The translations under genes were made by a program, and so were the position numbers. Positions 3,697 to 47,631 of a stretch of 64,000 bases of DNA are shown here, piece by piece. Source of the stretch: Mytilus californianus (lineage: Eukaryota). The notes under the pieces are model-generated. The model saw only the letters and a program-made list of their open reading frames with translations, did not search any database and was not told the origin of the DNA. Within the stretch, counting starts at the first letter, position 1, and each line of letters opens with the position of its first letter. The stretch lies in assembly GCF_021869535.1 (NCBI RefSeq), contig NW_026262581.1:122202001-122266000 (forward strand), written 5' to 3'.

Positions 3697-6600
3697 ATGA
3701 CAACTATGGAAGAATATAGAGACCTTCAGGAAAAGTTTGTAGCCAACCACACAGGAACCAGTGTATTAGAAATTTCAGTTGTTTTATCAGTTCCAGTTGT
3801 GTCTGTATTTCTTAGAAGAGCTTTACTGTTAGCCTTTCATATTCATGCACAGTTTTCATTGGGCCAGTCAAGTGTTTGGTATAGTATTTTTATATAAATT
3901 TCATCAATATGATTTATGTATGGTACAAGAATGAAATCAAATAAATAGCACCTGAATTTAACAGAATCTAAGAATTTATCAAACAACAAAATAGTGTTTC
4001 CTTTAAAATGTAAACTGAAGTTAGAACCTATCCACTAACATATCAGAGGATACATGTAATATGTAGCTAAGACAATGAAATAAAAGATATATGCATATTT
4101 TAGTAAAGCACATTTTTACATATATCGCTGTGATTGTTTGTTTATTCTTCTTTAAGATTTTTATACGGCGGTCGTATATTGGTATGACGTTGGCGTCGTC
4201 GTCGTCGTCCGAAGACAAATTGGTTTACGCACTCTAACTTTAGTTTAAGTGAATGGATCTCTATGAAATTTTACCATAAGGTTCAATACCACAAAAGGAA
4301 GGTGTGGATTGATTTTGGGGGTTATGGTACCAACAGTTAAGGAATTAGGGGCCAAAAAGGGTCCAAAAATAAGCATTTTTGTAACTTCCAGACATAACTT
4401 GTGTGTTAGTGTATGGATCTCTCTGACATTGTACCATAAGGTTCCATATCACAAAGGGAATGCTGGGATTGATTTTGGGGGTAATTGCCTCCAAATTTTA
4501 GGAATTAGGGGCAAAAAAGGGGCAAAAAACAAGCATTTATCTAGTTTCATGACAATAACTTGTGTGTAAGTGTATGGATCTCTCTGACATTGTACCACAA
4601 GGTTCCCTATCACAAAGGGAGTGCTGGGATTGATTTTGGGGGTAATTGCCTCCAAATTTTAGGAATTAGGGGCCAAAAAGGGGCAAAAAACAAGCATTTT
4701 TCTAGTTTCATGACAATAACTTGTGTCTAAGTGTATGGATCTTTATGAAATTGTACTACAAGGTTCCATATCACAAAGGGAAAGCTGGAATTGAGTTTGG
4801 GCGTAATTGCCCAAAACATTTAGGAATTAGGGGCCAAAAGGGGCCAAAAATAAGCATTTTTCTAGTTTCCAGACAATAACTTGTGTTCAAGTGTATGGAT
4901 CTCTCTGAAATTGAACTGTTAGGTACCATACCACAAAGGGAAGGCTGGGATTGATTTTGGGGGTAATTCCCTCAAAATTTTAGGAATTAGGGGCCATAAA
5001 GGGGCAAAAAAACAAGCATTTTTCTAGTTTCAGGACAATAACTTGTGTGTAAGTGTATGGATCTTTATGAAATTGTACTGCAAGGTTCCATATCACAAAG
5101 GGAAAGCTGGGTTTGAGTTTGGGGGTAATTGCCCTAAACGTTTAGGAATTTGGGGCCAAAAAGGGGCAAAAAAACAAGCATTTTTCTAGTTTCCAGACAA
5201 TAACTTGTGTTCAAGTGTATGGATCTCTCTGAAATTGTACTGCAAGGTACCATACCACAAAGGGAAGGCTGGGATTGAGTTTGGGGCCGATGAATCATAA
5301 GGGGGTTAAAAAAATTTGGGGGGGGATTTTTTTTTTCCTTTTTTTTCTTTAAAATTTTCCATTATAAATTGGTTATTTCTGATTTATATATAAAAGCAAA
5401 TAATAATGATATGGTTTGAATAGGTAAATTAAAAAATTTTAAGTTCTTAGACCACATTCATTCTGTGTCAGAAACCTATGCTGTGTCAAATATTTAATTA
5501 CAATCCAAATTCAGTGCTGTATCAAGCTTGAATGTTGTGTCCATACTTGCCCCAACTGTTCAGGGTTCGACCTCTGCGGTCGTATCAAGCTGCGCCCCAG
5601 CAGGAGCATTTTATTTGTATTTGATTTGTGTCAAAATGAAATATAATCAAAAGATAATTCAATTTAATGTTTATGGATGATTTTTTTTGTTAATGATAAG
5701 TTTTCCATCTTTACAAATTAAGTATAGTGCACAGAAAAATAAAATGCAAATTCATTCCAACTTTGAACAATTTAATACAAGAAGTTTAAGCTGAAAAAAA
5801 TAGCATTTTTTTGTTAATTTTTATGATTCGGAACACAAAAACTAAACGAATGCTAGATAAAAATTAAGTGGAGGATAAAAATTTAGAATAGTCTGGTAAC
5901 CTGAAACATAATATTCATGTTTTAAGCTTATATGAAAAGTACATATTTTGCAGGAGGATTTTTATGATTGACTTTTTGTGTTTGGTGCTGCCAACACTCT
6001 TGTCAGCTACCACTCATTCAGAAAGTCTTTATTTCCTATTCTCTTCTGTACTGGTGGTAGCAAGTGGTTCCATCATTTTGCAGTGTTACAGAATTCCAGG
6101 TTTAACATGGAAACATGCAAAGACAAGAGTGAAAGACTTCCCAGCAATCGAAATAAATGACAGGTTTCAGTTCATATCCAATTTTAAAGCCTACACTTTG
6201 ATAGGAACAGTGATTTCAATATTAGCCGTAGATTTTACAGTCTTTCCTAGAAGATTCTGTAAAACTGAGACTTATGGCACAGGATTAATGGATGCTGGTG
6301 TTGGGTTGTTTGTTGTTTCCAATGCAGTTGTGTCTCCTGAGGCACGAAACAAAATGACACAAGGTCAGAATAGGTAGAGTATAATTGTATTTTTAAAAAC
6401 ACATTTTAAATATATCATTACAATTAGAAATCACAACCATATATTCATATTAAATCACATGTGATTTTTTTTTATCTACAGAACAAGTTTTCCTTGAGAC
6501 TAATTAATACCACAATCTTGATTAAAATACTTTCTTGTGTCCATGCTCCGCTTATAAGGATCTGAAAACATTGCGTTCTACTTTCTATTTTAAAGACCTT

Positions 6601-9600
6601 TCTGGATCCTCTGGTTTTATTATAATGTTACACACCTTCAAAAATTTGAAGGCAGGACTTCATTGGCTGATGTAATAATTAACAGAAGGGAAAATGGAAC
6701 AGAGTGTTGTTGTATCTGTGTAAGCAGAGCTTTGACACAGAATCTGGGGCTCTTTTCACAAAAAATCTTAAGACTAAAATAGGTTGTAAGTTATACTAAA
6801 ATGTTCATGACTAAAGAGTATTTTTGCTTGTAAGATTTTTTGTGAATTGAGTCGCTGTATTTTAATCAGATTTTCAGTACCAGGGATTGGCTACTAGTGA
6901 AATCTCATGTTTGTCTCAAATAAGTTTTTGAAAGATTTCATATGAAATATTTTTAGCCTAAAAAAGGTAGAATGTATTTTATAAATGTAACATGTTCTTT
7001 TCCATAACGGCCCTGGAATCATCCTGAGACTCCCATATTAGCCCAAGGTGCCAGCTGAGGGCTCATATCGGTGGAGGGATGATACCAGGGGCCCATATGG
7101 AAAAGGACATCAATTTATCACATATTATACAAATGCTTAGTAGAAAGAATTTTATCACTCCATCTGGCAAGATCATATATTTTTGTCCTCCACTGAAATA
7201 ATTCTGCTGTCATTTTAATCAAAGTTCCTCATACGTCATTGTTATTATAAATGCTTATGACGTCATTACAGGGCACAATAACCATTTAAATGCCCTGGGC
7301 AGGAATATGACTAGGGCAAATCTGCGTTTATTGCATATGCAAAACCCAATGTTTTCGTAACAAATATGTGATAAAATTTTAAATTGATATTTTTGCAGTT
7401 AATCTTAATATCTCCCTAAGTCAATGGAAATAAATGTATTATATCCCCCTTGGAGTGTGGAAGTAACTGTAAATAGTGTGCAGTATACTCTTATAGTACA
7501 GTGCAATGTTGTTTGATAAGGATGACATTATACAATTATGGCCCGTTGAAAAGGTGAATATCCAAAATTGTCAACACGAGAAGGTTATTTCACTGAGGGC
7601 GCAGCCCGAAGTGAAATAACTTTTAAGGGTTGACAATTTTGGATATTCATCGCTTCTAAGGGGCCAGAATTGTTTTATTATACCGAACTAACAGTGGAAG
7701 GGCATTTTGAATCATTGTAAAAACACTTACCCTTACTTGAGTCAGTAACAAACACAAGTTGACGTTCAAAAATACATGTAATTTGTGTCTTAGAATTCTC
7801 GTATGTACACCAAAGGTAGATTCTTTTTGTAAAATATTGATGGCTCTGAAAAGGACCGTTATTAGAGATATCATCGGCACAAGATGCATGTCAAAAGCCT
7901 TATTTCCTCTTCTCTCGATCAATGGGCTTCCTGTAACTTGAACGTTGCCATTTTGTTTATTTACGTCTGTGACGTCATTTTCATTAGTACAAATCAACAA
8001 ACTAAAAAGGTTATTCGCCGGTGAATAATAGGGTTATTCAACGCTGGTGTACATTTTTAGGGTTATTCGTTCTTCCTTGCAATTGAATGAAAATTAACTG
8101 AATTATTCCATGTCACATGATAACGTTTTACCCAATAGAATTGTTTGAAATATATGTAAGGTATAATAATATTAGTTAGTAGGTAAATGTTATCTTTTGT
8201 AATTTTGTTTCAAAAGTTTAGTCATGCAAAAAAAAAAGTTATTGTATGAATATTGGTAAACAATATCACCCTAAGAATATTGCACTCAAAATCTTATGCA
8301 ATATAATATTTTACTGTTTATTTCACCAGTATTTTCTGCAATAACCATATATTTTTAGTCATGATTTTATTATAAAAAGTAACATGAAATGAATACATAT
8401 GAAAATATATAAAATTGTAAAACTGATATTTTATTTTATTTTAAAGGTTTTCCCAAGTCTATAAGTCTATCATATCAAGCCTTCCATTATTAGTATTAGG
8501 ATTAGCTAGAGTTATAACGACCAAAGGAGTGAACTACCAGGAACATGCAACAGAATATGGTACACATTGGAATTTCTTCTTTACTTTAGCAACTGTCAAG
8601 GTAATTGTTTTAGTATGACAAACACAAAAAAAAATAATATAGAAACACCTTGCTTAATGCTCTAATTTGTATGAATAAGCTTCTCTTTGTCAAGAACTAA
8701 TCGTTTATTCTTTATTTAATGAGTAGGAACACCAGATACCTTTGGCTATCTTTCTTTTACAAGTTGTGTCTGTTGCATGTGGGATACTACATGGAGATCA
8801 TTGTTTAGTATAATTATTCCTGAACCCTAGGTCCATGATTGTTGAAATCTCTGTAAGCTGTATCACAAATACTGCGCACATGATATTTATATGATTGTTT
8901 ACTGCCATTAATAGAAGGTGTGATGTAAATAAACATGGAATTGTTAGTTTGAAAATGAAGGTTGCTTACTATGTCTAACACTACAGACTGGAGGATCACA
9001 TTTAAAAATATGTCCACACTTTGTCTACAGTCTTGGTCAAATTAGCTGTATTATTATCCAGATGAGTGCATTATGTATGAAACTGCCACTTTATTAAAAA
9101 AGCAAAAGTGGTCCATTACAGACTAACAGGGCTTTAATACAGGGCCATTATGAATAAACAGAGTTATAATGAAAAAAACAGGGCTATTATGAAAAAACAG
9201 GGCCATTATGAGTATTCAGGGCTATTACGGATATTTGATTGCTATCAATTCAAATACATTTCTGGTGAAAAGAAACATCAAAAATTGAAAGTTCCCAAGA
9301 ATCCTGACTTATCTTATTTCACCCAGTTGTCAAGTCAATAATTACATAATAAATTCCATGATGTGTATCAATTTATTTATTTTTGAGAATGAAATCTTGT
9401 ATTTTGTCTTAAATTGCCATAAATTGCCTTGAAAAAGGACAACAATAAGACTATATATACATTTACATGTTATTCCATGACATCACTTTAAAAAGTTCTT
9501 TTTAATATTGCATTTGGTTTAATTATATATATTTAATTTCTCCACAAAAAAACTGATTTGGCTTGGTTAAATATTACAAATTGACGGTTTGGATAATAAA

Positions 9601-12600
9601 AATGTTAAGAAATGGGTGTTTTCAAATTGACCCTGTTATTTGTACACGGTCAGTAATAATGGCCTCGGAGGTTGTTATGTACTTTGGTGTTGCCCTATGC
9701 CATTACAGGCATCCTTGTTCATTATAACAGACCTTGGACATATAACAGGGCCACTATGAAAACACTCATTAATTAATACTATATTAATAAACATATGATA
9801 ACAATATCAGTGCACACTTTCTGGAATAACCTTCCAATAACCAAAGTTTGGGAAGCTTAAAACATACATTAAGGGCCTTAACAACAACCAAAGCCATCTC
9901 AGGTCAGATTTTTCTAGAGGGAGTTGCAATTTTAAATTTATTCAATTTTTGCACCATTATCCTAGTTTTGAAAGGAAAACAATGTTATTTAAAATTCCAC
10001 AGATGTTGTCATTCTTGTATTTTGTCAGAGTTGTGTCCCCTATACCAGTAGGTATATTTATTGGACAACTCAATAGTTCTGGAGGATAACACTCCTAAAA
10101 CAATTCATGATGAAATCAGAGGCAGACTTGAGCCTTCGGTGTTTTTTTGCAAAGTTAATGAATGAGAGTTCATGTTTTTTGTAATTTCTTTACTTTGAGC
10201 AACGCTTTAATTCTACTATCAAAACTTGACTCTGATAAAAGTTTTTATAGATATTTTTTATTTTGAACTTTTAAGATAAATTAAAAGATATATGTCTATG
10301 AAAATAGCTGTATTCCTACGATTAGTTATCTGTCATTAAACTATTCACAAATTGTTATGAAACAAAACTGTTATTTAAAATATTATAGTTTACGGCCATT
10401 GCAATGAAATGAGCGCATGAATGAAACTTTTTCACTACAGTATTAATCATTACATACTAATACATTGTATAAACTTATATAGTTGTCATATACCTTGACC
10501 TCGTTAATGTATTGATTACTAACTTATTGCATCAATTATTTTCTTTTTTCAGATATTAGCCAGTATTTTAAGTTTTCTACTATCAGTAGTGTATTGGAAG
10601 TTTGTTGTGATTTTATTGTGTGTTGTACATCAATATTTACTGACATACAGAGGCCTGAGCCAGTACATTATACAGGTAAATAAAAGAACAGTTGTTGTTT
10701 TGCCCATTGTGGATAATATATATATTTGCTATTGACTGTTTAGCAAACAACAATCAAGCAAATGAAAGTATGCCACTGTCGATTCATCTGTCAGATCACA
10801 CTTTTAAAATAAAATAAGTAAAATTTACTTTTTATTTGCTTAGATACTACTAAGATTTTCTTGCCATTCAGAGAATCCATTATAGAGGCATCCTACTACA
10901 TGTGAAAACAAAAATTATCCCCCTTTTTCATAATAATTAAAGTTATGTAACTCCAAAATAACAATTCAAACAACTGTCAAAAAGACACTTATCATCACTA
11001 TACCTGTCTAATCAAATTTTTGAAATAAAGTTTAATGATCAATAAACAAAAATTTGACTTATTGTATTTTGTGTAAAAGTTGCTCATTTTTGTTAAACCC
11101 CTTAACTTCAAAATGACAATTAAAACAATCATCTAAACCAAAACAAGTGCTTTTATCAATCTTTCTATGCATTTTGTTAAATTTCCTGAAAATCAATCAA
11201 GCAAACTAAATTTTTTATAATAAAACTGAGTCAATCAAAAATAAAAGGTGTTATTAGTTTTATCTATAAATGCCAGGTAAGCAATACAGGCTTCTTGAAG
11301 TTATTACTTCTATTCATCTTCTATAAAATATGAAAAAAATGATAAAGAATAATTTTAGAAATTTACACCATTTACTGTTTCTAGGGCATAGATGGCCATG
11401 GTGGAAGACACGGAATATTAGACAGTAATAGAGAAGGCATCATTTCAAGTGTGGGTTATTTCATCATGTACTTGTTTGGGGTTGAGATAGGAAGATTAGT
11501 TTTTAAAAAGGAAAGGTTTGTATAAGAAATCATATATTTTTAAGTCTGCAGATCTTTCCTGACTTTTCTTCTAATTTGATCTGTGGTTTTAAAAGTTAAG
11601 AAAAGAATAGGAAGGAATAGCTAATATGAAAGATTAAAATTCCAAAATCACTGGGAGAAAAGTTTCTTGGTACAGGGTCTTTGCACCTGAAATTTGTGGG
11701 TTTAACCAGGTGTTATGGTGTTAAACTTAATGTTTAACTTCTGACATGTCTGACACTTATAGAAATGTATTATACCAAAATATCAAATAAACACAAACTT
11801 TTTTCTGCATCTTGATCTACACACAATTTACAGTAGTATATCGAATAGTCAAACTACTTATGCACTTGCATGTATGTCTTTGAAATTGCGTGATGAAACA
11901 GCATAGTACAATATAGCTGCAAGGTTCTTATGATATTTTTTGACATGTCCGCAAATTGTCAAAAAATATCATAAGGACCTATGAGCTATGGTTTTGCAGC
12001 TAAGGACAATATTGACTGATGTTAAGTTCCAAATTTATATGTACACAACCATCATATGATATGTATGGATTGCCAATTTATAAAGTAGCAAATCTTGCAC
12101 CTAACCAACACAAGAGGATTCCAACATCTCTGTTTATTCTATAAATAGTGACATAAGTAATCACACAATGCACTTGATACTTTTCCACATATTTATTTTG
12201 TATAATTATTACAGGAAAACAGTATCAGATTATATGAATCTGTTAGGAGTATTAGTTATATCAGCAGGATCTTTATTTACTGTATTACCATACCTGACAC
12301 AGATTGAACCTATATCAAGGAGATTTACTAATGTACCTTATGTTATATGGATGGTATGTTTGTATTTAATACAAAAACAATTTTAAAAGTTATAACAGTT
12401 CTTCATTCTTTAAGTGTAAGTTTGTGTTTACCTGTTATACATCTAATATAATGGATTCTTTGTTTCCCCTTAATGACAATTATTTACATTTTTTATCTTC
12501 ATTTATAAGATTGCAACTTTCGGAATATAAATTGTAAGAGCAATTCCTTGGGATAAGTTATGCTACATGTTTTATTTATCACACAGACTCAGTCAGTTGT

Positions 12601-13820
12601 GAAAACACGGAAGACACTTACTTGGTGGGCAATATAAATGGTAAAAAGAAGGCATGTAGAAATCATGAACTATTTATGAGTTCTAGTGTGCACACTATTG
12701 TGTTTGTACATTTTGAAAAAATCCCTTTGAAAGATGTCATGTTGAAATCATGATTTCTTCCTGCTATACACACAAGCAAACCTGTTAAAATATTAAGGTT
12801 TGATGAGGTCCTATACATTTAATGACAAAATAAGAAGAATATGGATAAAAATGGGTAGAACAATTGGTTTATACACAGAAGCATGCAAATACATGTACAA
12901 AGAGAACAGAAAGATGGCATTCCAACAGTTAATTTTGAAAATGTTCATCGAAGACAAACTTTTTAAAAGTAGATAACAGTTTTTTCTCAATGATCTTTGA
13001 TTGGAAACATAACATGACATGATGACCACATATTAGTTTTGCTATCTGATGTATTCCATAGTCATTATGTTTCTGCTTTGCACCAGCAAATTATTAAATG
13101 AATTTTATTTTGTTTTAGATTGGAATATGTTTACAGCTAATGGCTTCTTATTTGTTAATAGATTTGATTTTCCTCTTTCTCAAAAGTTTACAAAATAAAA
13201 AAGAAAAAGGTGAGTTGATTTCATGCTCTATATTGTAAATATGATTAAGTATGATTTCCAATGAGACAACTCTCCACCAGAGACCAAATGACTTAGAAGA
13301 TAACAACTATAGGTCACCATACAGCCTTCTATAATAAGCAAAACCCATACCGCATAGTAATGTTTGTTTTGTTCAATGCATTATTTATTTTGATGAGCCA
13401 AACTCAGTTGTTTTGAAATCTCATTTAACTCAAGTAGAACAAACGTGTCAAAGTTTGAAATGCATGAAAATTTGAAAGGAAAAGAAAGAGTCAAATAATG
13501 AAATTTTATTTTCATGTTATATTGAAAATTAAAATGACATGTTAATTGTTTCCTTCATACAGTTTAAAACACTTGAAGTTTTGATTGTTACAGGTATAAA
13601 AGAAGATAAAGTATTGTACAGTTTAATAGATGCTGTGAACTACAATGGCTTGTTATACTTTCTGATAGCCAATTTATTGACAGGGATAATTAACCTGAGT
13701 ATAAAAACTATTTTGGTGCCACCAATTTACAGTGTTATTATTATTGTTATTTATATGATTATATTATCAGTCGTATCATTTATTTTATATGTAAACAATG
13801 TTAAAATGAAATTCTGGTAA
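3697..13820 (+). CDS. PIGW: GPI inositol acyltransferase PIG-W (GWT1 family), 8 coding exons, 488 aa
   Basis: Exons 3697-3878, 5954-6373, 8447-8600, 10553-10675, 11385-11515, 12215-12353, 13119-13209 and 13594-13820. All introns are GT-AG with compatible phases, total 1467 nt. Family motifs: [100 protein letters not shown]. An acceptor AG at 3689-3690 implies an upstream 5'UTR exon. Confidence 0.95.
4158..5610 (+). mobile_element. Non-autonomous Helentron/HINE-like element with internal ~161-bp satellite, in PIGW intron 1
   Basis: 5' end TTTTTATACG..GTCGTATA followed by a (GTC)n microsatellite. 3' end TGCGGTCGTATCAA (subterminal inverted repeat) plus a short GC-rich stem. Internal units marked by GTATGGATCT at 4411, 4572, 4733, 4893, 5055 and 5217. 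Family assignment rests on architecture. Confidence 0.75.
6992..7110. repeat. Imperfect hairpin (foldback element remnant) in PIGW intron 2
   Basis: Arm ATGTTCTTTTCCATAACGGCCCTGGAATCATCC pairs with GGATGATACCAGGGGCCCATATGGAAAAGGACAT. Confidence 0.75.
7532..7673. repeat. Imperfect hairpin (foldback element remnant) in PIGW intron 2
   Basis: GGTGAATATCCAAAATTGTCAAC..GTTATTTCACT pairs with AGTGAAATAAC..GTTGACAATTTTGGATATTCATC around a GAGGGCGCAGCCCGA core. Confidence 0.8.
13249..13358 (+). repeat. Fragment of an abundant dispersed repeat associated with Penelope-like element termini
   Basis: CCAATGAGACAACTCTCCAC..AGACCAAATGAC..CAACTATAGGTCACC is shared with copies near 2460, 22385, 36136 and 48115. 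Confidence 0.75.
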
Positions 13821-16800
13821 CAATATATATGGTTCCTAGTGACTTGACTTGCAGACTTAAAGATAATCATTTAGTTTTGATAAGGTTGTTAAAACTGTTA
13901 TAAATACTAGTGACAGACTATGGAAAACATATTTGTATAGGAGTCAGGACTGTAGTTTATGTTTTGTCTCCTAAGGCAAAAATAGTTCGTCTGTTATAAG
14001 TGATTTATACAAAAGAGTTAGCAACTGGCAATATCAATAAAAAAATAAAGATGACCGAATTTTTAGAGAGAAGACAAGCATAAAATTGTTTATGGGGATT
14101 TTTTTTCTCCAAAATTACATGAATATAAATTCTAAATTCAAAAGTAGCAGTTGGGCTTAGTGTTTCTTAGAATGATTAAAAAACAATTTAAACTGATGTC
14201 TGTATCATTTGTTCTCTTTTAAATATGTCACAAGAAAGAAACTGTTGGGCACTTTATAGAACTCCTATGTTCTAAAACAATTCAATCATTGCCAATCACG
14301 GTAACTTATTTTTCAAAGTTGTGGGATAGGTGCAATAGAATGAGAATGAATAATTGTAGTAGCTTTCACTTAATTTTTGTTTTGTTTACAAAAGCATAAA
14401 CTATGTTTTGATTCTTACTGTATTGATCAATCACTTTAATGTCTAGAAAATTAATTTCAATTGACAGAGAATTTGAATTTACTTTTTTCTGATGTGTGAA
14501 CTTTCTTGTATGACATTAAACGATTACTCAAAACCACAAAAAGTACCAGGCTGAGTATTCTGCACAGTAACATGCTTTGATATTTAGTGGTTGTACCTTT
14601 GCCCTGTTTTGATTATCTGACTACCAAGCATGTATAGTTGTATACATATTATATACTTACTTCTATTGCAGTATATATTAGTAATTTAGTAAGATGCAAA
14701 CTATGGAGGGCCTTATCTATAAAATATTAAATACAATATAAGGTGAAATAATGTTTGAGCTCAACCTAAAAAAACTGTGGCTTTTTTGTTAAGATTTAAC
14801 ATTAATTTTAGTTTTAAGGTTAAACAAATTAATTTAACTAAATTGTTTTTTTGTGCAATGTTTTATGTCTGTGATCATTCCAATTTGTAATTTTGTAATA
14901 AAAGTGAAAAGTAACTACATATTTTTCTCTAATGTGTTCTTTTTCAGTATCTTACATGTTTAGCATATGTGTTTGATTTGACTTTGGAATGATATAATGG
15001 ATGACGCATGCGTTATAAGAATAACTGGAGATGCTTATCATGTTGACATTGTTATTGTGAAGAACCCTAGAGGCTTTGCCTTATCAGAGTACCAATAGAC
15101 CATGGATAGAGAAAGGTTGTTAGTATGGAACAAGTCCAATGCAATGATAATATTCTTAATATCCAATTCTAATTGTTGATTACCCGTTTCCTGAGGATTA
15201 ATGAAACTGATGGTTAATATACCTTTTTTTATATTTTTGGAAAAGAAAGCTGCAAAAATAATTTTGTTAAGACATGTAATTATTTTGAGAAAATATTAAA
15301 TACATGATATGAAAAGGAGATTACCTTAGTCATGTTCAACATCATGGTTTGATATTATTGATTTTGCTGTAAAATTATTTCCCTTCTATATCCTTAATTT
15401 TCTAATCATGTAGGGAGATATATTGTTTAAGTGGTATTACTTTTTCTTGTTATTGTTCTCATACACCTTGTCTGTGTCAAGACACCTTTATTTTTTGACA
15501 TTTACTTGTAATACTTGGCATGAAGGTGTATTACCATATGAAAGTGTGTCAGTCACATCTCATCATGTCCTTCATTTGACCTTTACCATTGACCTGATGG
15601 TTAAAAAAACAAATTTGGGACATTTTCTTATACAAACCATAACTTTTTAATCAAGACCATGTGCCACATACCATTGAAGACGACCTCTGATCTAATCATT
15701 TGAATGTTTTTTACGAACATTTTCATCACTGCTCAAAACCATATATATTCTTGCTTGAAATGACAAGAACTTTTTTAGTGCATCTAATGGTAAGGACCTG
15801 GCAGAAATGCACCATACCTTTCATATAATAAATTGTAAAATATCTCTATAAAATGTTTTAGATCCCCACTCATTGACCACTTATTTTCATAATCATTATG
15901 ATAAGACCTTTCTAGTGCACTATAGATTTTGCTTTGGCTTCAGGGGACATGGTTCACCACTTTCATATCATTAATTATCAAATATCTTTAATTTAAAACT
16001 GTTAAGATCACCACCAATAGATTATATACATTCTTAATTGTCATGTCAAGACTTAACAGTTTCCTTAGCTTTACCATAGGGATGTTCTCTTCTTCATTTA
16101 TATCATAAATGGTTAAATATATAAAAATAATGTTCAGATCCCCACCCTAAACCAAATACATGTATATTCTAAATTGCCATGATTAGACCTTTCTTCTGCT
16201 AGATAGATTTTGTCCTGGAAGTGTTTGTCACACCCAACTTCTCTTCTCTTAAGGATGTACTTAGGTGAAATTAAAAAAATCTAGAATTTAAAATTGATAC
16301 TATAAGTCAGAAGAGCATTAGTTAAGGAACAAAATAAGCTAAATTATTGATAGTTTATGGAGCTCCTTTTCGAGATATTAATTTTTTTTAAATGGCGGGA
16401 AACGGCTGACTCGGACTTTTACCTTATATTTGCATTGGTATTATTTGGGTCTCAAATCAAAAGAAAAGAAATCTAGAATGCTTAAATTTTGGTAAATAAC
16501 CTTTTATGAGCTATTGAAGTCTTGTATGAAAAGAAAAATGGGTGTTATGGGGCAAAATACTTTACCCTGTATTGTAGGAAAAAAACCAAGGAGTCCAACA
16601 TCTGACACAAATTCCTAAACCTGACCTAAGTACATCCTTAAACTGCTGTTGAATATATAGAAAAAAAACAGAAAAAATCCTCACCAATTTACCATGTGTA
16701 GTCTTAATTGCCATGACAATACCTTTCCAGTATTGGAGTACTAGAATTTGTTTGTTGAGCTTTCCTTTACAGGAATGACTTGTATAGATGAAGGGAGACA

Positions 16801-17512
16801 TATATTTAGTCCACTAAAACAATTCCACTTTAATATTTTAGAAAACATATTTAAATAAAGAAAAAATACAATATTTGTTTTGTTAGAAAACTAAGCAATA
16901 CTTTATTGCTATACCTTTAACATTGTCTGTAATTTCTGTCTGTTATTTATCCATTCTCAATGACATTATGAAGAAATATAATTACAGTATAGTTTTTGGT
17001 AAAGTTTTCCTGATCAGATTATCTTTTTAGTTACTAAGAGTAAAAGGTGAACTATATTTGGTCAATGGAATCTTTGTAAAGTGTTGATACGAATATAAGA
17101 ATATTTACAGACAAAAGACATGCAGTCTTCAACAATAGAAATGTTCCTACCATATGTCAAGCTCTAAATAATATCAAAGATCTGCCATTAACACAGAATT
17201 CCCAAAACCATGTTTAATATTTAGACATAACATACCCTTAGTAAGTTTGATCCAAGTAGCAACAACTTGATCTCTAGATTTTCAAAATACAATGTACTAT
17301 TCGGTCATTGTCGATTACACAGGTGAGTTATTTCCAATACGTTCAAGTGTTCGTTCTGGTATGGATTTGTGTCTTCCAAATGATTGTAGTTAAAGGAGTC
17401 TTATATGTCTTTTGATTCCTTGTCCGAATTTGGCTATACTTTAGGTTCTTTTTGGTTTTATCAGCTCTGCAACGTTTGTATTAGGTTTTGGATTTACAAA
17501 TATTGTGGCCTC

Positions 17513-17560
17513 GAGCGTTACTGAAGAGACATTAATTGTTGAAATGTGCATTTGATGCAG
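17513..17560 (+). ncRNA. Minimal type I hammerhead ribozyme remnant
   Basis: Stem I GCGTTA/TGATGC, core CTGAAGA (17521-17527), stem II GAC-ATTAATT-GTT, GAAA (17541-17544), near-palindromic stem III TGTGCA, then the UH site TT. Confidence 0.6.
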
Positions 17561-17786
17561 TAAAATTTGTTCCGTTTATATTATTGATGCAAAACCATCT
17601 TCAACTGTCATATACCTAGGAGATTTGACGGTGTAAATTATGCTCAACCACACCATTTTGAAGAAACTGTGACAAAGTGTACCTCGTCAGGAATATAAGT
17701 TGGTCTCTACTTAGTGTTCTGATAGTCTTGTATTTCTATATTTTATCTCTCATGTACTCTTGAACTGTGGAGTTTTATTGGATTAT

Positions 17787-18285
17787 TAGTTTACTTCTTC
17801 TTCCCAATGTACATTAGTTTACTTCTTCTTCTCAATGTACATTAGTTTACTTCTTCTTCCCAATGTACATTAGTTTACTTCTTCTTAAGGAATGACTGTA
17901 ATATTTTTTCTGTCTATGAAGAAATAACATCAAAAATGTGGTGCACACTGAATAACCCACGTAGCGGGTTATTTTAAAGTGTGCACCACATTTTTTATGT
18001 TATTTCGAATAGACAGAAAAAATATTACAGTCATTCCTTATAATTTAATTCAAAATTCCGTTTTAAGCCGGGGTAAATCATGACAAAACGTTCATGACGT
18101 CACCGTCACATGACAAAATTATGTCTATGAGCTGATAGACAAAACACTGTCAGCCAATCAGATGACGCGTTACATCCAAAATTAAATTATTTCCCAATGT
18201 ACATTAGTTTACTTCTTCTTCCCAATGTACGTTAGTTTACTTTTTCTTCCCAATGTACATTAGTTTACTTTTTCTTCCCAATGTT
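17787..18285. repeat. 28-bp minisatellite (ATTAGTTTACTTCTTCTTCCCAATGTAC) split by an insertion
   Basis: About 3.6 units lie before 17887 and about 3.3 units after 18190. The interrupted unit rejoins across the insertion with TT on both sides. Confidence 0.9.
17887..18190. mobile_element. 304-bp non-autonomous element: 153-bp hairpin module plus a module with short inverted ends
   Basis: AAGGAATGACTGTAATATTTTTTCTGTCTAT... (17887) pairs with ...ATAGACAGAAAAAATATTACAGTCATTCCTT (18039). ATAATTTAATT (18040-18050) is inverted to AATTAAATTAT (18180-18190). The insertion into the minisatellite is clean. Confidence 0.85.
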
Positions 18286-18572
18286 ACTATGTAAGCTTGG
18301 GCTAAGGAGACGGTAAGCAACATCGAATTCAAATCAAAAAGACCATCAGTGGTAGACATGCGAACTTAACACATGTTAAGCACTAACAGTGACACAATGG
18401 GAGTAATGAAAATAATTTGTGGAAGTAAAAAACCTGAGGAAAGAGTTAAAGGACAAACACTAGTCCATATATATAGAACACTATACAGAAATCTTAACAT
18501 TGAGCAACACTAACCACATTTAAAATCCATTGGTATGTCAATTATGAATCATATTAAAACGAGTCAAAATAG

Positions 18573-18674
18573 GATGGATTGTGGTGGTCATTTGTCACAC
18601 TAACGTTCTGTAGCGATGGTGTGATGAATTGTGGTGGTCATTTGTCACTCTAACGTTCTGTCGCGATGGTGTGA
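18573..18674. repeat. Direct tandem duplication, 2 x 50 bp
   Basis: GATG(G/A)ATTGTGGTGGTCATTTGTCAC.CTAACGTTCTGT.GCGATGGTGT occurs at 18573 and 18623. Confidence 0.85.
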
Positions 18675-19113
18675 AGCCTTAGTTCAGTAGTTTCCTTGTA
18701 AGCAACAAACCTCTATCAAGAAATTCACGATAGGAAACATTAGCTATGGAATATCGTAGAAAAAAGTAAGAAGATACCAAGGGGCAATCACAAACCACAT
18801 GTTGAAGAAAGCAGACATTAACATGAAAAAGAAAAAGACAGATAACAGTCCACAATCACAACACAAAAAATTAAATTGGGCAACCCGAATACCACAAAAA
18901 TATAGAGCCACCTCAGATTATCATGATACTGATACCTTCGTGTTACTTATTATAATAGAAGTAAACACCCTGAGATAAGTTTACATACGGATGATTTTAT
19001 GAAAGAGGAAAGGATAAAGGAATGATAACCTTTGCTTCAATAGTTTTTGTTTCAAGTAGTAATCTTTTATGATGATATGATAGTGAACGCAAGCCCTACA
19101 TATAGATTATAAC

Positions 19114-19235
19114 ATGGCATTTTTCATATCCGACCCCTTATCAGCCCTAGGTCACGATATCAGCCCGAGAGCCGACAGGCTCGAGGGATGATTTTGACTT
19201 TGGGCTGATAAGGGGTCTGATATGAAAAATGACAT
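19114..19235. repeat. Near-perfect hairpin (foldback element end) upstream of the cGLR gene
   Basis: ATGGCATTTTTCATATCCGACCCCTTATCAGCCC pairs with GGGCTGATAAGGGGTCTGATATGAAAAATGACAT. Architecture resembles the 6992-7110 hairpin. Confidence 0.85.
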
Positions 19236-19702
19236 TTTATGTTCTTTTTATCAGAGACATATAATACAATTATGTCTCTGTTTTTATCATATACTTCAGC
19301 AGAAGCCATACAGACAAGGAAAACTTGTATTAATATTTGTTTTGCATTTTTTAATAATATATTTTCCTGTTTCCTAATATTCGTTCTTTTATTCTACTTA
19401 GTTATTATCACTAAAATGTACCACTGAGGTTTATTTTCCGCAATTTGCAGAATGACGTCGAAATACTTTGCGATAACGTTAAAGAAAGGCATGAGATAAT
19501 TACCGGAAGCAGTTGATATATACCGGAAGCAGTTGATAGCTAAGACAATTCTTCAAATTTAATGAATAAATATATGTATAAATAAGTTTTATCAAGGGGT
19601 TCAATTATACTATTATTTTCTACAAGTATATGATAAAATATTATATCAACTGGATGATATATAAAACAACCCAACTCCACACAGGTGGTATTACATAAAA
19701 TT

Positions 19703-19729
19703 GGAAAGTCCACCATGCGAAAATTGAAG
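19703..19729. promoter_or_regulatory. Candidate NF-kB-like site next to an IRF-like site upstream of the cGLR
   Basis: GGAAAGTCCA (19703-19712); its reverse complement TGGACTTTCC is one mismatch from the canonical kB site GGGACTTTCC. It is followed by GCGAAAATTGAAGT. Motif match only. Confidence 0.25.
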
Positions 19730-20440
19730 TCATCTAAGTCACCACAATTTTTAGATCGTCAAACAACCTTTATGTTTATCATTAGTTGTGCATTTGAAAA
19801 TTTTGTACAATCTCAATTCTTTATCCTAATAGTTTCTAATAAAAGAAAATAGATAATTTAGAAGCATTTGTAACAACACGAAGCATGTAAAGATTTCATA
19901 CACATAAAAAAAAGTACTTGTAAAAAAATATCGTATTGCGGGTTTTAAATGAACTTGGTTCACTGGGTTTAACTATATCAAGATTATGATGATTTTATAA
20001 AGAGTGCTAGAGTTTGATATTGCAAAAGGTATGTCTTTTTCTAATTTTTTATTCGAACTCATACTTATCGCTCACACTAGAATGATATTGAAACAAAGGT
20101 TTCGGTGAAAAAGAAATATACATTTCTGTTATTTTTTTTACTTCCGCCTGTTTTTCTTACAGGTTAAAACTTGCTAATACTTATTTGTTTGGATTCGTAT
20201 ATGTATTTATTTTTTTCTACTTTATGTGCTGCAGACTTATCTGTTGAATTTATTAAATAAAATGGAAATGTCTTTAAGATGATTAAGAGGAAAAGAATTA
20301 ATAGGAGAGGAAAATTTTAATTGGCTGTTAGACATATTTGATTTAGAGGAATGCTGCCAAAGTTCGTAATAGAAGTATAATACATACTCGGTAATACTAC
20401 TTTTTCTATGAATAGAATATTTTGTTTGTATACTTTTAGT

Positions 20441-21538
20441 ATGGCTGAAGGTTTTACTTATGTTCCAGAGATAGAATTATGGAAAAGTTTGAATGTGTTT
20501 TATACTTCATACGGACATCTTACCAGATCAAAAGTTTTGCCTGAAGTTGTAGAAACTGCTTACGCTATTCTACAAAAAATACAAGAAACAAGTGAAATGT
20601 TTAAAGGCGAAGTGGTAAAAGTTGGAAGTTCAGCTTCTAAGGTGTCAGCAATGTTTGATGACGAAAGTGACGTATTATTTCCTATCTATATTGAAGGACA
20701 AATTGAAGCGACTGAGGATCCGGAATATGTCAAGTTTAAATTACCGAAGCGCTGTGTGAAAATTTGGGAAATCTGTTCTGATAATGAATATTTAAGCCCA
20801 AGTAAATTTTCTAATCACTTTTATGATTTGGTAAACGATTGTTTAGAAAAACTGAAACCGGATGGTAAGATCGAATTAGAAGGAAAGGGCACAGTTGCAG
20901 CAACTCTAAACTGTTGCCATGAAAAGTTCGATTTTTCTGTTGATTTAGTTCCTGCAGTTAGATGCAAACCATGGAGTACAAATCCATATTGGATGACTGA
21001 CAAAACAAGGCAGTGGCCTCCGAGAGATATACTGGCTTCTTTTATTGGAAGGGGTACAGAGCTAGTTTCAAAGTCATCTAGAGGTGGTGGAAATAATTGG
21101 CGTTTGTCGTTTTCCCATGCTGAAACGGAGCTAGTTACAAATGCAACTTTAATATTCCCAACATTTGGAAAGCTCTTGATTATTTGGAAAACGCTACGAA
21201 AGCTTTATTTCTCACCACAAAGTAGACATTGTACAATATTATTTAAGTCTTACCATCTTAAGATATTATTATTACACGAGGCAATAGATAACCCGGACAA
21301 AGAAGCATGGGAAAACCAGAACCTTGCTCTTAGATTTAAGTTGTCTTTGGAACGTCTGCGACAACATATAAAGGCAGGATTTTTACCTCACCTATTTATC
21401 CCCACAGTCAATCTGTTTTCCAATGGCACACCTCATTTCGTTTTGGACCATAAACTGTTTACAACTAGCGATTTGGCAGACGTCATGAGAAACATTCGAA
21501 AATTGGACAGAACGGACTTTTACCCCGGTGGATTTTAA
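20441..21538 (+). CDS. cGAS-like receptor (cGLR; Mab-21/cGAS-DncV-like nucleotidyltransferase), 365 aa, single coding exon
   Basis: Uninterrupted ORF with VGSS (G62-S63), DDESDVLF (E75, D77), SVDLVPA (D168), WRLSFSHAE, IIWKTL, KSYHLK and LPHLFIPTVNLF. A polypyrimidine tract and AG at 20438-20439 place the start at ATG 20441 rather than 20408. Confidence 0.9.
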   Translation: MAEGFTYVPEIELWKSLNVFYTSYGHLTRSKVLPEVVETAYAILQKIQETSEMFKGEVVKVGSSASKVSAMFDDESDVLFPIYIEGQIEATEDPEYVKFKLPKRCVKIWEICSDNEYLSPSKFSNHFYDLVNDCLEKLKPDGKIELEGKGTVAATLNCCHEKFDFSVDLVPAVRCKPWSTNPYWMTDKTRQWPPRDILASFIGRGTELVSKSSRGGGNNWRLSFSHAETELVTNATLIFPTFGKLLIIWKTLRKLYFSPQSRHCTILFKSYHLKILLLHEAIDNPDKEAWENQNLALRFKLSLERLRQHIKAGFLPHLFIPTVNLFSNGTPHFVLDHKLFTTSDLADVMRNIRKLDRTDFYPGGF

Positions 21539-22383
21539 AATGTTTTAAATGTGTTGCCGATTCTCATTTACCATGTCTAGATATTTGTACTCATCAGAAC
21601 TTAGTTGATTTTATGTTCTTGAAATTTTATCGGCATTTGTTATATTGCGCACACTTGAATAACTAAAGCTTTCACATAAAACGAATACTCATATCAATAT
21701 AAAATAATAAGATTTAAGGTGAATTTTAAATTAGAACTCAATCCAGTTTTACGAACTATAATAGATGCAAATATAATTATAACTTAAAACGTTATGTTGC
21801 ATTTTTCAGACAAGGATACAAGATCAAAATGTTATTTTTATGGCTTTATCATTTGTAGATACGCAGGTAAATTTTCAACTTTGCATGGATTCGCTCAATG
21901 AGTTATACAAATTCAATGATGGTGATGTGGACCTTGTCTTCATAAATATAGAATTTATCGCTTTGAAACCATGTTTAGGTGTGTAAAAGGGGTTTCAAAT
22001 TTTGATTTCTGCTTCAAGAAGTCAAATTTTCGGACCTTAAATGTAAGCAACTCTAGAATTTGTTGCGCTTGTTTTGTTGTCACAAACTTTGAGATTTTGC
22101 TTAATATAAGAGATGTTTCGACATGTCATTTTCTGACAAAAAATGTAGATGGTGATGTATTTAATCATGTGTTGTTCGCTCAAGGACCAAATTCTGAACC
22201 CGCAATTTTGAACTGATAGTATTTTTATTGTGAACTGACAACCTTTTTACATTTGCATTTAGGGGTGGTCTTTTCATAGAATTATTGTTTTACAACTACA
22301 TCGCTTCTGCATACAACATTTTGTTTGTAGAATGCAATGTCCAGCCTTTTAAAAAAACAGTCGAAATATATTAGAATATAGAA

Positions 22384-23910
22384 ATAAGAAGATGTGGTAT
22401 GATTGCCAATGAGACAACTCTCCACAAGAGACCAAATGACACAGAAATTAACAACGATAGGTCACCATACGGCCTTTAACAATGAGCAAACCCATACTGC
22501 ATAGTCAGATATAAAGGCCCCGAAATGACAAATGTAAAACAAACGAGAAAACTAACGGCCTAATTTATGTACAAAATAATGAACGAAAAACAAATCTGTT
22601 ACACAGCAACAAACGACACCCACTGAAATACAGGCTCCTGACTTGGGACAGGCACATACAGAATGTGGCGGGGGTAAACAAGTTTGAAGGCGCCAACCCT
22701 CCACATAACCTGGGACAGTGGTGTAACAGTACAACATAAGAACAAACTATAAAAATCAGTTGAAAAAGGCTTAACTCATCAAATGGATACAAATAGAAAT
22801 ACATCTACCAAAAACAGACAGTGGACGTGGCAGGGTACTTATACATTCCCACAACAAAAAGACACTAAGTACAGATCTGAGAATACTCGCAGTTACTGAC
22901 AGCTAGTTTAAAGCCAATAAAAACTTATAAAAAAAATCTTGCATCTAAGACTAAAATATCAATCAGTACACATCCAACATCCAATGGATTTAGTGTAAAG
23001 ACGTCGTTAACATGCAGCCAGAGAAAAACGTGACCTTGTGCAATGCCAAGATACAGGTATCGACAGGTTGTAGAGCCACAAATGTGCATATGTATATAAA
23101 AACAATATTTAGTTTGATTTTAATTTACCGATAACAAAATCAATATTAATACCAATAAAAACAATATTCAAAGATCAACAGTGTTGCATTGGTAACCTTT
23201 TAGAATAGTTTATTTAAAGGATCGATAAGTTTTCCCGGATCGTATATAAATCTCCAGGCTCGGTAAACAACATCTCCGTAAAAATTAGGATGTTCTATCC
23301 CGATTGAAATAAGTTTTCTACAGGTACAACCAAACTTCAAAACTAAATCTTTATATCTATGGAAGAATTTAGTAAAGGTTTTAAGTAATTTGTGGTAACG
23401 AAATTCCTGACTTAATAATTTACCAGCAATACATAGATTACGTTCATTGAAATCCAAAACGTCACAACATACACGGTAATAGCGAACGAGTTGTGATATA
23501 TAAACACCGTAAGATGTACCAAAGGAACATCACCGTCCAAAAAATGAAAATTAACAATAGGGAACGAAAAATCGTCCCTTTTATCGTAATTTTAGTGTAG
23601 AGTTTCCCCTGTAAAACTGAAATATCTAAATCTAGGAAAGGACAGTTATTACCGTTTATATTTGATTTATTTAAAGTAAGTTCTTTTCGGTAAATTTCGG
23701 GAGTATATTTAGAAAATTCTTGATTATTTAACGAAAAAATATCAAGATAACGGTAAGAGTTGTTGAATTTATCAATTAAATGCAATTTAGACGGGTCTTT
23801 ACTGAGTTTGGTCATAACAATACAAGAACAAGTCTGCTATTAAAGGGGGCGCAATTGGTGCCTAAAGGAATACCCCCAACCTGTCGATAAACTTTATTGC
23901 TGAAACGTAC
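22384..23910 (-). mobile_element. 5'-truncated, decayed Penelope-like retroelement (RT core and thumb plus 3' terminal repeat)
   Basis: Minus-strand frames give VYRQVGGIPLGTNCAP, LIADLFLYCY, RYLD-IFSLNN (one catalytic Asp missing), CPFLDLDIS and MDFNERNLCIAGKLLSQEFRYHKLLKTFTKFFHRY, with frameshifts. 22384-22720 matches the dispersed repeat seen elsewhere in the window. Confidence 0.8.

Positions 23911-27476: not shown

Positions 27477-31175
<3,699 letters not shown>

Positions 31176-44371: not shown

Positions 44372-47631
<3,260 letters not shown>

What the first reader, a model, noticed from the sequence alone, without database searches (positions are those of the whole stretch)
20441..21538. 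Stand-alone cGAS-like receptor with intact active site and no Zn-ribbon
Seen in sequence: the NTase signature G62-S63, E75-x-D77, D168, the lysine equivalents in IIWKTL and SYHLK, and no Zn-ribbon insertion after SFSHAE. Established: cGLRs are nucleic-acid-sensing enzymes, expanded in bivalves, that make diverse cyclic dinucleotides for STING. Inference: this is an active receptor of unknown ligand and product. It has an atypical E-S-D catalytic strand and no accessory domains, and sits alone between housekeeping genes rather than in a cluster. This is the best candidate here for an uncharacterised immune signalling component.
Basis: partly seen in the sequence, partly recalled or inferred. 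Interest (0 to 1): 0.7.

Follow-up and report, generated by a model that had tools for sequence, protein, structure and literature searches.

The report
Solitary mussel cGAS-like receptor gene
This is a real, intact, weakly expressed mussel gene for a cGAS-like immune enzyme with a complete active site, but it is one ordinary, already annotated member of a family known to be hugely expanded in bivalves, and its trigger and product are untested.

Summary
Window 20441-21538(+) is a single-exon CDS of 365 aa with both Mab-21 Pfam domains. G62-S63, E75-x-D77, D168, R221, K250 and S270-Y271-H272-x-K274 align to the cGAS active site, and there is no Zn ribbon. An AlphaFold2 model (pLDDT 91) superposes on DNA-bound cGAS at Z 33.

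The genome is a Mytilus species. The identical protein is already in NCBI. The M. galloprovincialis ortholog is named "cyclic GMP-AMP synthase-like receptor 1". The gene sits alone between PIGW and alpha-tubulin, and this order is kept in M. coruscus and M. galloprovincialis. dN/dS is 0.19-0.36. Low-level, strand-consistent RNA reads cover it.

It belongs to a small, well-supported mollusc clade. Only 20 of 365 positions are invariant there, and they include the catalytic residues. True MAB21L2 lacks these residues.

Two details differ from the textbook motif: V instead of Q/T before GS, and S/C between the acidic residues. The protein is near neutral (pI 7.2). Known nucleic-acid-sensing cGLRs have pI above 8.5, so the ligand is open.

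Lacking a Zn ribbon and accessory domains is normal for invertebrate cGLRs. Verdict: a new, uncharacterised member of a known kind, of modest interest. This scan also noted other cGLR genes on other pieces of this genome.

The parts
20441..21538 (+). Complete CDS (365 aa plus stop) of a cGAS-like receptor, all in one exon
   Evidence: ORF. Identical 365-aa protein in NCBI. Pfam Mab-21 and Mab-21_C. AF2 model pLDDT 91.3, pTM 0.90. Z 33 to cGAS.
20624..20629 (+). G62-S63 of the NTase GS motif (GGA AGT), preceded by clade-invariant V61
   Evidence: Sequence. Alignment columns. G62 and V61 invariant in 14 non-redundant clade members.
20663..20671 (+). E75-S76-D77, the two metal-binding acidic residues on the catalytic strand (GAA AGT GAC)
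   Evidence: Aligned to cGAS E-F-D. E75 and D77 invariant in the clade. The middle residue is S or C in the inner clade.
20942..20944 (+). D168, third catalytic aspartate (FSVDLV)
   Evidence: Aligned to cGAS ISVDI. Invariant in the clade. Q in MAB21L2.
21101..21118 (+). R221-L-S-F-S-H226, the nucleotide-contacting WRLSFSH strand. The cGAS Zn ribbon would follow here and is absent.
   Evidence: No Cys or His in residues 227-250.
21188..21190 (+). K250 (IIWKTL), aligned with the conserved lysine of the cGAS LLKY helix
   Evidence: Nearly invariant in the 64-sequence alignment. Invariant in the clade.
21248..21262 (+). S270-Y271-H272-L273-K274, aligned with the cGAS SYHVK nucleotide-binding segment
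20420..20439 (+). Polypyrimidine tract plus AG immediately before the ATG. It may be the 3' splice site of a 5'-UTR intron. Its use is not shown.
   Evidence: Conserved in three Mytilus species, whereas the upstream in-frame ATG at 20408 is not. The fused M. edulis gene model enters the CDS at this point. No spliced read was seen, and Logan contigs run collinear with the genome across it.
21539..21979 (+). Probable 3' UTR
   Evidence: A transcriptome contig in run X1 spans 20586-21979 and one in X2 reaches 21837. There is no coverage beyond this until the repeat at 22319.
3706..13192 (+). Upstream neighbour: PIGW (GWT1) exons. Context only.
   Evidence: tblastn of the M. edulis PIGW part. Same gene order in M. 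galloprovincialis and M. coruscus.
27477..28628 (-). Downstream neighbour: main exon of an alpha-tubulin gene. Context only.
   Evidence: Pfam Tubulin and Tubulin_C. PDB alpha-tubulin at E 2e-257. Same position in the orthologous loci.

Best explanation
The gene encodes a minimal, stand-alone cGAS-like receptor (cGLR). It consists of a Mab-21 nucleotidyltransferase core and helical lobe only, without the vertebrate Zn ribbon or the basic N-terminal tail.

By analogy with characterised cGLRs, it most likely rests in an inactive state, is switched on by binding a ligand on the face opposite the active site, and then uses two Mg2+/Mn2+ ions held by E75, D77 and D168 to join two NTPs into a cyclic dinucleotide. 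One of the several mussel STING proteins would read that product.

**Shown here:** family membership, full fold, intact active site conserved under selection, purifying selection on the gene, conserved solitary synteny, and low-level transcription of the + strand.

**Inferred:** catalytic activity, ligand gating and STING as receiver.

**Open:** ligand and product. The near-neutral charge makes a long dsDNA or dsRNA ligand less certain than for cGAS, Sp-cGLR1 or Cv-cGLR1.
For: - **Domains and sequence relatives.** Pfam finds Mab-21 and Mab-21_C. A profile of the clade scores PDB chains in this order: Sp-cGLR1 8GJY 125 bits, cGAS 88, MAB21L1 74, Cv-cGLR 8GJW 68. The entries were identified.
- **Structure.** The AF2 model has pLDDT 91.3. 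It aligns to cGAS-DNA-product complexes at Z 33.2, rmsd 2.6 A over 325 residues, covering residues 13-355.
- **Conservation of the active site.** Only 20 of 365 positions are invariant in 14 non-redundant clade members at about 30-38% identity. These include G62, E75, D77, D168, K250, Y271 and K274. The chance that G62, E75, D77 and D168 all fall in the invariant set at random is 7e-6.
- **Contrast with MAB21L2.** A bona fide MAB21L2 representative has no GS, E-x-E instead of E-x-D, Q for the third Asp, and no Arg in WRLSFS.
- **Selection.** dN/dS is 0.19 against M. coruscus and 0.36 against M. galloprovincialis, with no indels.
- **Synteny.** The order PIGW - cGLR - tubulin is kept in three species.
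- **Expression.** Raw RNA reads over 20743-21727 all lie in one direction. Transcriptome contigs in three further runs from two studies cover only the CDS and 3' UTR.
- **Receiver.** Mytilus genomes encode 5-9 STINGs, and M. coruscus STING is a functional cyclic-dinucleotide receptor (PMC11190208).
Against: - No enzymatic data exist for any member of this clade.
- An intact motif is necessary but not sufficient. MB21D2 has one with no known product (PMC9980059). Three shrimp Mab21 proteins related to cGAS neither bound nucleic acid nor made cGAMP (PMC12928593).
- The motif departs from the published h[QT]GS and [DE]h[DE]h patterns at two positions, V61 and S76.
- The pI is 7.16. The NTase core has net charge -3 and the spine helix -1, against +6 and +3 on average in the vertebrate cGAS clade. 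Known nucleic-acid-sensing cGLRs have pI above 8.5.
- Expression is low and the condition sampled is unknown.
- The deep tree places the clade only weakly (SH-aLRT 79), and on the side that also holds MAB21L2 and MAB21L3.
Confidence: 0.6

Rival explanations
1. It is a non-canonical Mab21 protein. It keeps the fold and nucleotide-binding pocket but acts mainly through protein-protein contacts (for example by boosting a TBK1/IKK-epsilon-type kinase) or has a non-immune conserved cellular role, and does not act as a ligand-gated cyclic-dinucleotide synthase.
For: - Shrimp Mab21 proteins related to cGLRs bind neither dsDNA nor dsRNA, make no cGAMP, and activate IKK-epsilon directly (PMC12928593).
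- This protein is near neutral, and its NTase core and spine helix are acidic.
- It is a conserved, solitary, syntenic gene under purifying selection rather than part of a fast-evolving immune cluster.
- The deep tree does not separate the clade from MAB21L2 and MAB21L3 with support.
Against: - The few positions that stay invariant across the whole mollusc clade are the metal-binding and nucleotide-binding residues. That is hard to explain unless nucleotide chemistry, or at least nucleotide binding, is under selection.
- True MAB21L2 has lost these residues.
Confidence: 0.25
2. It is specifically a dsRNA-activated cGLR that makes a 3'3'-linked or other pyrimidine-containing cyclic dinucleotide, like its closest solved relative Sp-cGLR1.
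For: - The clade profile scores Sp-cGLR1 (8GJY) clearly above cGAS and Cv-cGLR1, at 125 against 88 and 68 bits.
- Sp-cGLR1 is dsRNA-activated and makes 3'3'-cUA, and dsRNA sensing is the more widespread mode among divergent cGLRs (PMC9980059).
Against: - Identity to Sp-cGLR1 is only about 25%, and the strong match covers mainly residues 104-327.
- The charge profile is unlike that of known nucleic-acid sensors.
- Ligand and product specificity in this family do not follow overall similarity.
Confidence: 0.12
3. It is a decaying intronless retrocopy or a mis-annotated ORF with no function.
For: - The whole CDS lies in one exon.
- Expression is low.
- The copy in one M. edulis assembly is disrupted after residue 242.
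Against: - The 365-codon frame is intact with no indels in three species separated by dS up to 0.21, with dN/dS 0.19-0.36.
- Flanking DNA diverges faster than the CDS: 66-73% against 91% identity to M. galloprovincialis.
- Orthologs in oysters and a clade reaching chitons keep the active site.
- Intact 365-aa versions at about 86% identity occur in other runs.
Confidence: 0.03

Closest known systems
Sp-cGLR1 of the coral Stylophora pistillata (PDB 8GJY; Li et al. 2023, preprint PMC9980059)
   Same: It is the best-scoring solved relative by clade profile (E 2.5e-35, 125 bits). It has the same two-lobe cGLR fold (Foldseek TM 0.67-0.71). It is a stand-alone enzyme without a Zn ribbon and shares the GS / ExD / D site.
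   Different: Identity is only about 25%. Sp-cGLR1 is a dsRNA-activated 3'3'-cUA synthase of the high-pI class, whereas this protein has pI 7.16. Ligand and product are unknown here.
Vertebrate cGAS (e.g. mouse cGAS-DNA complexes 4K9B, 4O6A; human 6CT9)
   Same: The fold matches over the full length (Z 33, rmsd 2.6 A over 325 residues). All catalytic and nucleotide-contacting residues align.
   Different: There is no Zn-ribbon insertion and no disordered basic N-terminal tail. V replaces T/S/A before GS, and S replaces F between the acidic residues. The core is acidic rather than basic, at -3 against a mean of +6. Identity is 21-24%.
Cv-cGLR1 and Cg-cGLR1 of oysters (PDB 8GJW), dsDNA-activated 2'3'-cUA synthases
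   Same: They are bivalve cGLRs of the same family with the same overall fold.
   Different: They are more distant than cGAS by profile score (68 bits). Li et al. place them close to human cGAS in the tree, whereas this gene lies in a separate mollusc clade.
MAB21L1 / MAB21L2 (PDB 5EOG, 5EOM), developmental Mab-21 proteins
   Same: The fold is the same (Foldseek TM about 0.65-0.69) and the profile score is comparable (74 bits). The deep tree does not separate them with support.
   Different: In the MAB21L2 representative the GS positions read D-A, E-x-E replaces E-x-D, Q replaces the third Asp, and V replaces the Arg of WRLSFS. This protein keeps all of these residues. MAB21L1/2 are extremely conserved across animals (background knowledge), while this clade is mollusc-restricted and divergent.
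Shrimp LvMab21-1/2/3 (PMC12928593)
   Same: They are invertebrate stand-alone Mab21/cGLR-like proteins with an immune role, and canonical nucleic-acid sensing is in doubt for them.
   Different: Their mechanism (binding IKK-epsilon, no CDN synthesis) is only a rival model for this gene.

Membership tests
Animal cGLR family (criteria of Li et al. 2023, PMC9980059) | Active-site motif h[QT]GS [X8-20] [DE]h[DE]h [X50-90] h[DE]h | tested here: inconclusive
   The catalytic residues are all present with allowed spacing: G62-S63, 11 residues, E75-x-D77-V, 88 residues, V-D168-L. Two non-catalytic positions do not fit the literal pattern: K-V before GS instead of h-[QT], and S76 instead of a hydrophobic residue. 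Vertebrate cGAS rows in the same alignment also show S or A before GS, so the pattern is looser in practice.
Animal cGLR family (criteria of Li et al. 2023, PMC9980059) | [quoted passage not shown] | tested here: met
   Pfam Mab-21 covers 92-233 and Mab-21_C covers 250-331. phmmer to cGAS spans residues 38-328. The profile match to cGAS spans 5-324.
Animal cGLR family (criteria of Li et al. 2023, PMC9980059) | Predicted structural homology to known cGLR / CD-NTase enzymes | tested here: met
   The AF2 model has pLDDT 91.3 and pTM 0.90. Foldseek gives E 3e-19 to cGAS and Sp-cGLR1. VIA-align gives Z 33.2, rmsd 2.6 A over 325 residues.
Animal cGLR family (functional definition) | Ligand-stimulated synthesis of a cyclic nucleotide second messenger read by STING | not testable with these tools
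   This needs recombinant protein and a nucleotide product assay. Only indirect support exists: the active site is conserved under selection, and STING genes are present in Mytilus.
Vertebrate-type cGAS | Zn-ribbon (H-x5-CC-x6-C) insertion after the SFSH strand | tested here: not met
   The Cys-rich stretch of cGAS meets only short gapped sequence here. Residues 227-250 contain no Cys or His.
Vertebrate-type cGAS | Basic DNA-binding surface and high pI | tested here: not met
   The pI is 7.16, against 9.50 for Spea cGAS. Net charge of the core is -3 and of the spine helix -1, against means of +6 and +3.3 in the vertebrate cGAS clade. Charge was counted by sequence region, not on the 3D surface.
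MAB21L1/2-type (degenerate active site, developmental) | Degenerate active site (no GS, third acidic residue replaced) and very high conservation across animals | tested here: not met
   The MAB21L2 representative P0088 reads SEIDAR / NEFEVV / YVVQIT / AWVLQFSE at the motif positions. The window protein reads VKVGSS / DESDVL / FSVDLV / NWRLSFSH. The window protein sits in a separate mollusc clade with 99% support.

The most novel reading that the evidence does not exclude
The gene is the Mytilus representative of a small, old, mollusc-wide cGLR lineage (bivalves to chitons). The lineage is kept as a solitary syntenic gene outside the birth-and-death clusters and is marked by an invariant V-G-S and a near-neutral, non-basic surface. 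It could sense something other than long double-stranded nucleic acid, such as a small molecule, a protein or a modified RNA, or it could be constitutively active. That would make it a conserved, non-nucleic-acid branch of cGLR signalling.
Probability: 0.2. Interest if true: 0.6.

Novelty: new member of a known kind. Interest (0 to 1): 0.3.

Why it matters
Bivalves hold the largest known cGLR and STING repertoires, yet only a few of their enzymes have a known ligand and product. This gene is a clean expression target: short, with its CDS in one exon, no appended domains, a confident model, and conservation from mussels to oysters. Its low charge sets it apart from the nucleic-acid sensors characterised so far. 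It would be a reasonable pick for a biochemical screen aimed at cGLRs with unknown ligands. It does not change what is known about the family.

Tried and rejected
- **Paralogs in the window.** tblastn found none.
- **Earlier scan notes near this place.** None.
- **Li et al. tables.** I searched the supplementary tables for the M. coruscus ortholog (CAC5386221) and for other clade members. No hit. The stored tables are truncated, so this does not show exclusion from their catalogue.
- **Final Cell paper.** I tried to open it by DOI to identify 8GJY and 8GJW, but it is not held. The entries were identified instead from Foldseek titles and a citing preprint.
- **Splicing at the conserved AG before the ATG.** No spliced read appears in the RNA run. 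Two Logan contigs of the M. edulis-complex ortholog are collinear with genomic DNA across it. They may be genomic or unspliced, so they do not settle the question.
- **Word-index homolog searches.** They returned only 8-12 relatives, which understates the family. The exhaustive search was needed.
- **Deep phylogenetic placement** against cGAS, MAB21L2 and MAB21L3. A quick tree leaves it unresolved (SH-aLRT 79).
- **Rejected: retrocopy or pseudogene**.
- **Rejected: real PIGW-cGLR fusion protein.** It appears only in one M. edulis model built on a garbled assembly region. The two genes are separate in two other annotations.
- **Not possible.** Model coordinates could not be read in scripts, so surface electrostatics were approximated by per-region net charge.
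Full report
**1. What is at the coordinates**

The + strand carries an open frame at 20408..21538, with a second Met at 20441. Translating 20441-21535 gives 365 aa.

- The upstream in-frame ATG at 20408 is not conserved in M. galloprovincialis.
- A polypyrimidine tract ending in AG at 20420-20439, directly before the ATG, is conserved in three species. It may be the acceptor of a 5'-UTR intron. No spliced read was seen, and two Logan contigs run collinear with genomic DNA across it, so its use is unproven.
- The window has about 33% G+C and no N.

**2. Organism and orthologs**

| Relative | Identity | Public name |
|---|---|---|
| M. coruscus CAC5386221.1 | 96% | "MB21D1" |
| M. galloprovincialis XP_076085287.1 | 85% | "cyclic GMP-AMP synthase-like receptor 1" |

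The window is therefore from a Mytilus species close to M. coruscus. A more distant paralog cluster includes an M. californianus protein.

In M. galloprovincialis and M. coruscus the gene is again a single 1098-nt coding exon, flanked by PIGW (GWT1) upstream and a tubulin gene on the opposite strand downstream. The window shows the same arrangement: PIGW exons at 3706-13192(+) and alpha-tubulin at 27477-28628(-). No other Mab-21 sequence lies in the 64 kb.

One M. edulis gene model fuses PIGW to this CDS. In that assembly the region after residue 242 is garbled by duplications and stops. I treat the fusion as an annotation artefact or a defective allele.

**3. Family and active site**

Pfam finds Mab-21 (E 2.4e-18) and Mab-21_C (E 7e-15) and nothing else significant. 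Against solved structures the single sequence hits:

| PDB relative | E-value |
|---|---|
| cGAS | 2e-15 |
| cGLR1 8GJY | 2e-15 |
| MAB21L1 | 6e-10 |
| MB21D2 | 3e-7 |
| MID51 | 1e-4 |

The alignments put G62-S63, E75/D77, D168, W220-R221-L-S-F-S-H226, K250 and S270-Y271-H272-x-K274 on the corresponding cGAS residues. Where cGAS has its Cys-rich Zn ribbon after SFSH, this protein has only short sequence, and residues 227-250 contain no Cys or His.

**4. Relatives and phylogeny**

The word-index searches gave only 8-12 relatives. Placement in the family, and the claim of a small distinct lineage, rest on the absence of closer relatives, so I ran the exhaustive profile search. It found 2804 representatives at E<=1e-3 but only 18 at E<=1e-30.

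A tree of 60 full-length domains shows:
- A 10-row bivalve clade (SH-aLRT 99) holding the Mytilus and oyster (Ostrea edulis) sequences.
- This clade is nested in a 16-row mollusc clade (99). That clade also holds a chiton protein (Liolophura "cGLR 1"), a clam protein (Mercenaria, auto-named "MAB21L1") and a second Mytilus paralog (auto-named "mab-21-like").
- The deeper position is unresolved. The clade sits, with support of only 79, on the side of the midpoint-rooted tree that also holds a MAB21L2 representative, MAB21L3 and a shark cGAS-like protein. The vertebrate cGAS clade is on the other side.

| Motif position | MAB21L2 representative | Window protein |
|---|---|---|
| GS region (59-64) | SEIDAR | VKVGSS |
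| Acidic pair (74-79) | NEFEVV | DESDVL |
| Third Asp (165-170) | YVVQIT | FSVDLV |
| WRLSFS strand (219-226) | AWVLQFSE | NWRLSFSH |

MAB21L2 thus has no GS, E-x-E in place of E-x-D, Q for the third Asp, and no Arg. The window protein keeps all of these.

Across 14 non-redundant clade members, only 20 of 365 positions are invariant. They include V61, G62, E75, D77, D168, K250, Y271 and K274. The probability that G62, E75, D77 and D168 are all invariant by chance is about 7e-6. Nucleotide chemistry, or at least nucleotide binding, appears to be what selection preserves.

**5. Structure**

With a 64-sequence alignment, AlphaFold2 gives mean pLDDT 91.3 and pTM 0.90.
- Foldseek returns cGAS, Sp-cGLR1 (8GJY) and MAB21L1 at E about 1e-18 to 1e-19, with TM 0.65-0.75.
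- VIA-align gives Z 33.2, rmsd 2.6 A over 325 residues to mouse cGAS-DNA-product complexes, covering residues 13-355.
- DNA-bound cGAS entries rank slightly above apo entries (Z about 33 against about 31). This difference is too small to interpret.

With the clade profile, the best solved relative by sequence is Sp-cGLR1 (125 bits), ahead of cGAS (88), MAB21L1 (74) and oyster Cv-cGLR 8GJW (68). The entries were identified.

**6. Selection and expression**

- **Selection.** Nei-Gojobori dN/dS is 0.19 against M. coruscus (dS 0.10) and 0.36 against M. galloprovincialis (dS 0.21), without indels. Against M. galloprovincialis the flanking DNA is 66-73% identical and the CDS is 91% identical.
- **RNA reads.** In a bona fide stranded-looking RNA-seq run (X21, about 6% of reads sampled), reads cover 20743-21727 at depth about 0.5-1.3. 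All have the first mate on the minus strand, as expected for a + strand mRNA in a dUTP library. This reading assumes that library type.
- **Transcriptome contigs.** Three further runs from two studies hold contigs covering only 20586-21979, 20607-21837 and 21251-21680. Unique flanking DNA has zero depth. That pattern is typical of transcripts, although these runs are only guessed to be RNA.
- **Conclusion.** The gene is expressed at a low level under unknown conditions.

**7. How unusual it is**

Li et al. (preprint PMC9980059) curated 3,020 cGLRs using three criteria: motif, two-lobe homology and AF2 homology.
- They report 87% as stand-alone enzymes and note extreme expansions in bivalves.
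- Their Table S5 lists 218 cGLRs and 9 STINGs in M. galloprovincialis, 119 and 8 in M. coruscus, and 55 and 5 in M. edulis.
- M. coruscus STING is an experimentally studied cyclic-dinucleotide receptor (PMC11190208).

The absence of a Zn ribbon and of accessory domains is therefore the rule for invertebrate cGLRs. The existence of one more mussel cGLR is expected.

Three things are mildly distinctive:
- **Solitary position.** The gene is conserved and syntenic, whereas clustered, birth-and-death cGLRs were noted elsewhere in this genome by this scan (I did not check those notes).
- **Motif deviations.** Two clade-wide departures from the published pattern: V instead of Q/T before GS (invariant in the mollusc clade), and S or C instead of a hydrophobic residue between the two acidic residues. 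Neither position binds metal. Vertebrate cGAS rows in my alignment also vary before GS (T/S/A). I therefore infer that catalysis is not impaired.
- **Charge.** The pI is 7.16 (orthologs 8.06-8.07). The NTase core has net charge -3 and the spine helix -1, against means of +6 and +3.3 in the vertebrate cGAS clade. Li et al. report pI above 8.5 and long basic grooves for dsDNA- and dsRNA-sensing cGLRs, and a less positively charged surface for auto-active ones. This weakens, but does not exclude, nucleic-acid sensing.

**8. Mechanism and rivals**

- **Main explanation (0.6).** A minimal ligand-gated cGLR uses E75, D77 and D168 with two metal ions to make a cyclic dinucleotide for a mussel STING. 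Ligand and product are unknown.
- **Rival (0.25).** A non-canonical Mab21 function of the kind shown for shrimp LvMab21 proteins, which neither bind nucleic acid nor make cGAMP but activate IKK-epsilon (PMC12928593). The clade-wide invariance of catalytic residues argues against a purely scaffolding role.
- **Sub-hypothesis (0.12).** A dsRNA sensor like Sp-cGLR1.
- **Pseudogene or retrocopy (0.03).** Essentially excluded.

**9. Verdict**

This is a new, biochemically uncharacterised member of a known and already catalogued family, and its protein is already annotated in public databases. Interest is 0.3. The most novel reading still allowed is a conserved mollusc lineage of non-nucleic-acid-sensing or constitutively active cGLRs. 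I give it about 0.2.

Noticed in passing
window 60807-63032 (+): A 741-aa uninterrupted ORF with a signal-peptide-like start. It is very Cys-rich and carries a recurring Y-K-N-[IVS]-F-C-x-[LM]-C-[NH] motif. It has no Pfam hit at E<0.01 and no PDB sequence hit. It may be an uncharacterised secreted Cys-repeat protein.
   Followed up: partly
window 27477-28628 (-) and 46630-47631 (+): Two tubulin exons lie on opposite strands about 18 kb apart. The first is alpha-tubulin (E 2e-257 to tubulin alpha-1A). The second has the same Pfam domains but was not typed.
   Followed up: partly
window 17788-18378 and 22319-22900: High-copy repeats flank the cGLR gene. Summed contig word depth in small transcriptome-like runs reaches thousands to tens of thousands. 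There are many variant letters, loose ends and internal rearrangement joints, as expected of transcribed transposable-element families.
   Followed up: no
L004 15716-16816 (M. edulis assembly GCA_905397895.1): The orthologous cGLR copy is intact to residue 242. After that it is scrambled, with a duplicated SYHLKIL segment and several stops, and the public gene model fuses it to PIGW (P0003). Whether this is an assembly error or a null allele was not resolved.
   Followed up: partly
proteins P0005 and P0021 (inner bivalve clade, Logan transcript contigs): Two clade members have G-Y and G-C instead of the G-S motif while keeping E-x-D and the third Asp. One also has Y for S270. This may mean altered or lost activity in a sub-lineage.
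   Followed up: no
window 13193-20440 (+): The window matches the PIGW part of the M. edulis fused model only up to its residue 365, ending at window 13192. Orthologous PIGW proteins are 488-490 aa. The last PIGW exon or exons should therefore lie in this interval and were not located.
   Followed up: no
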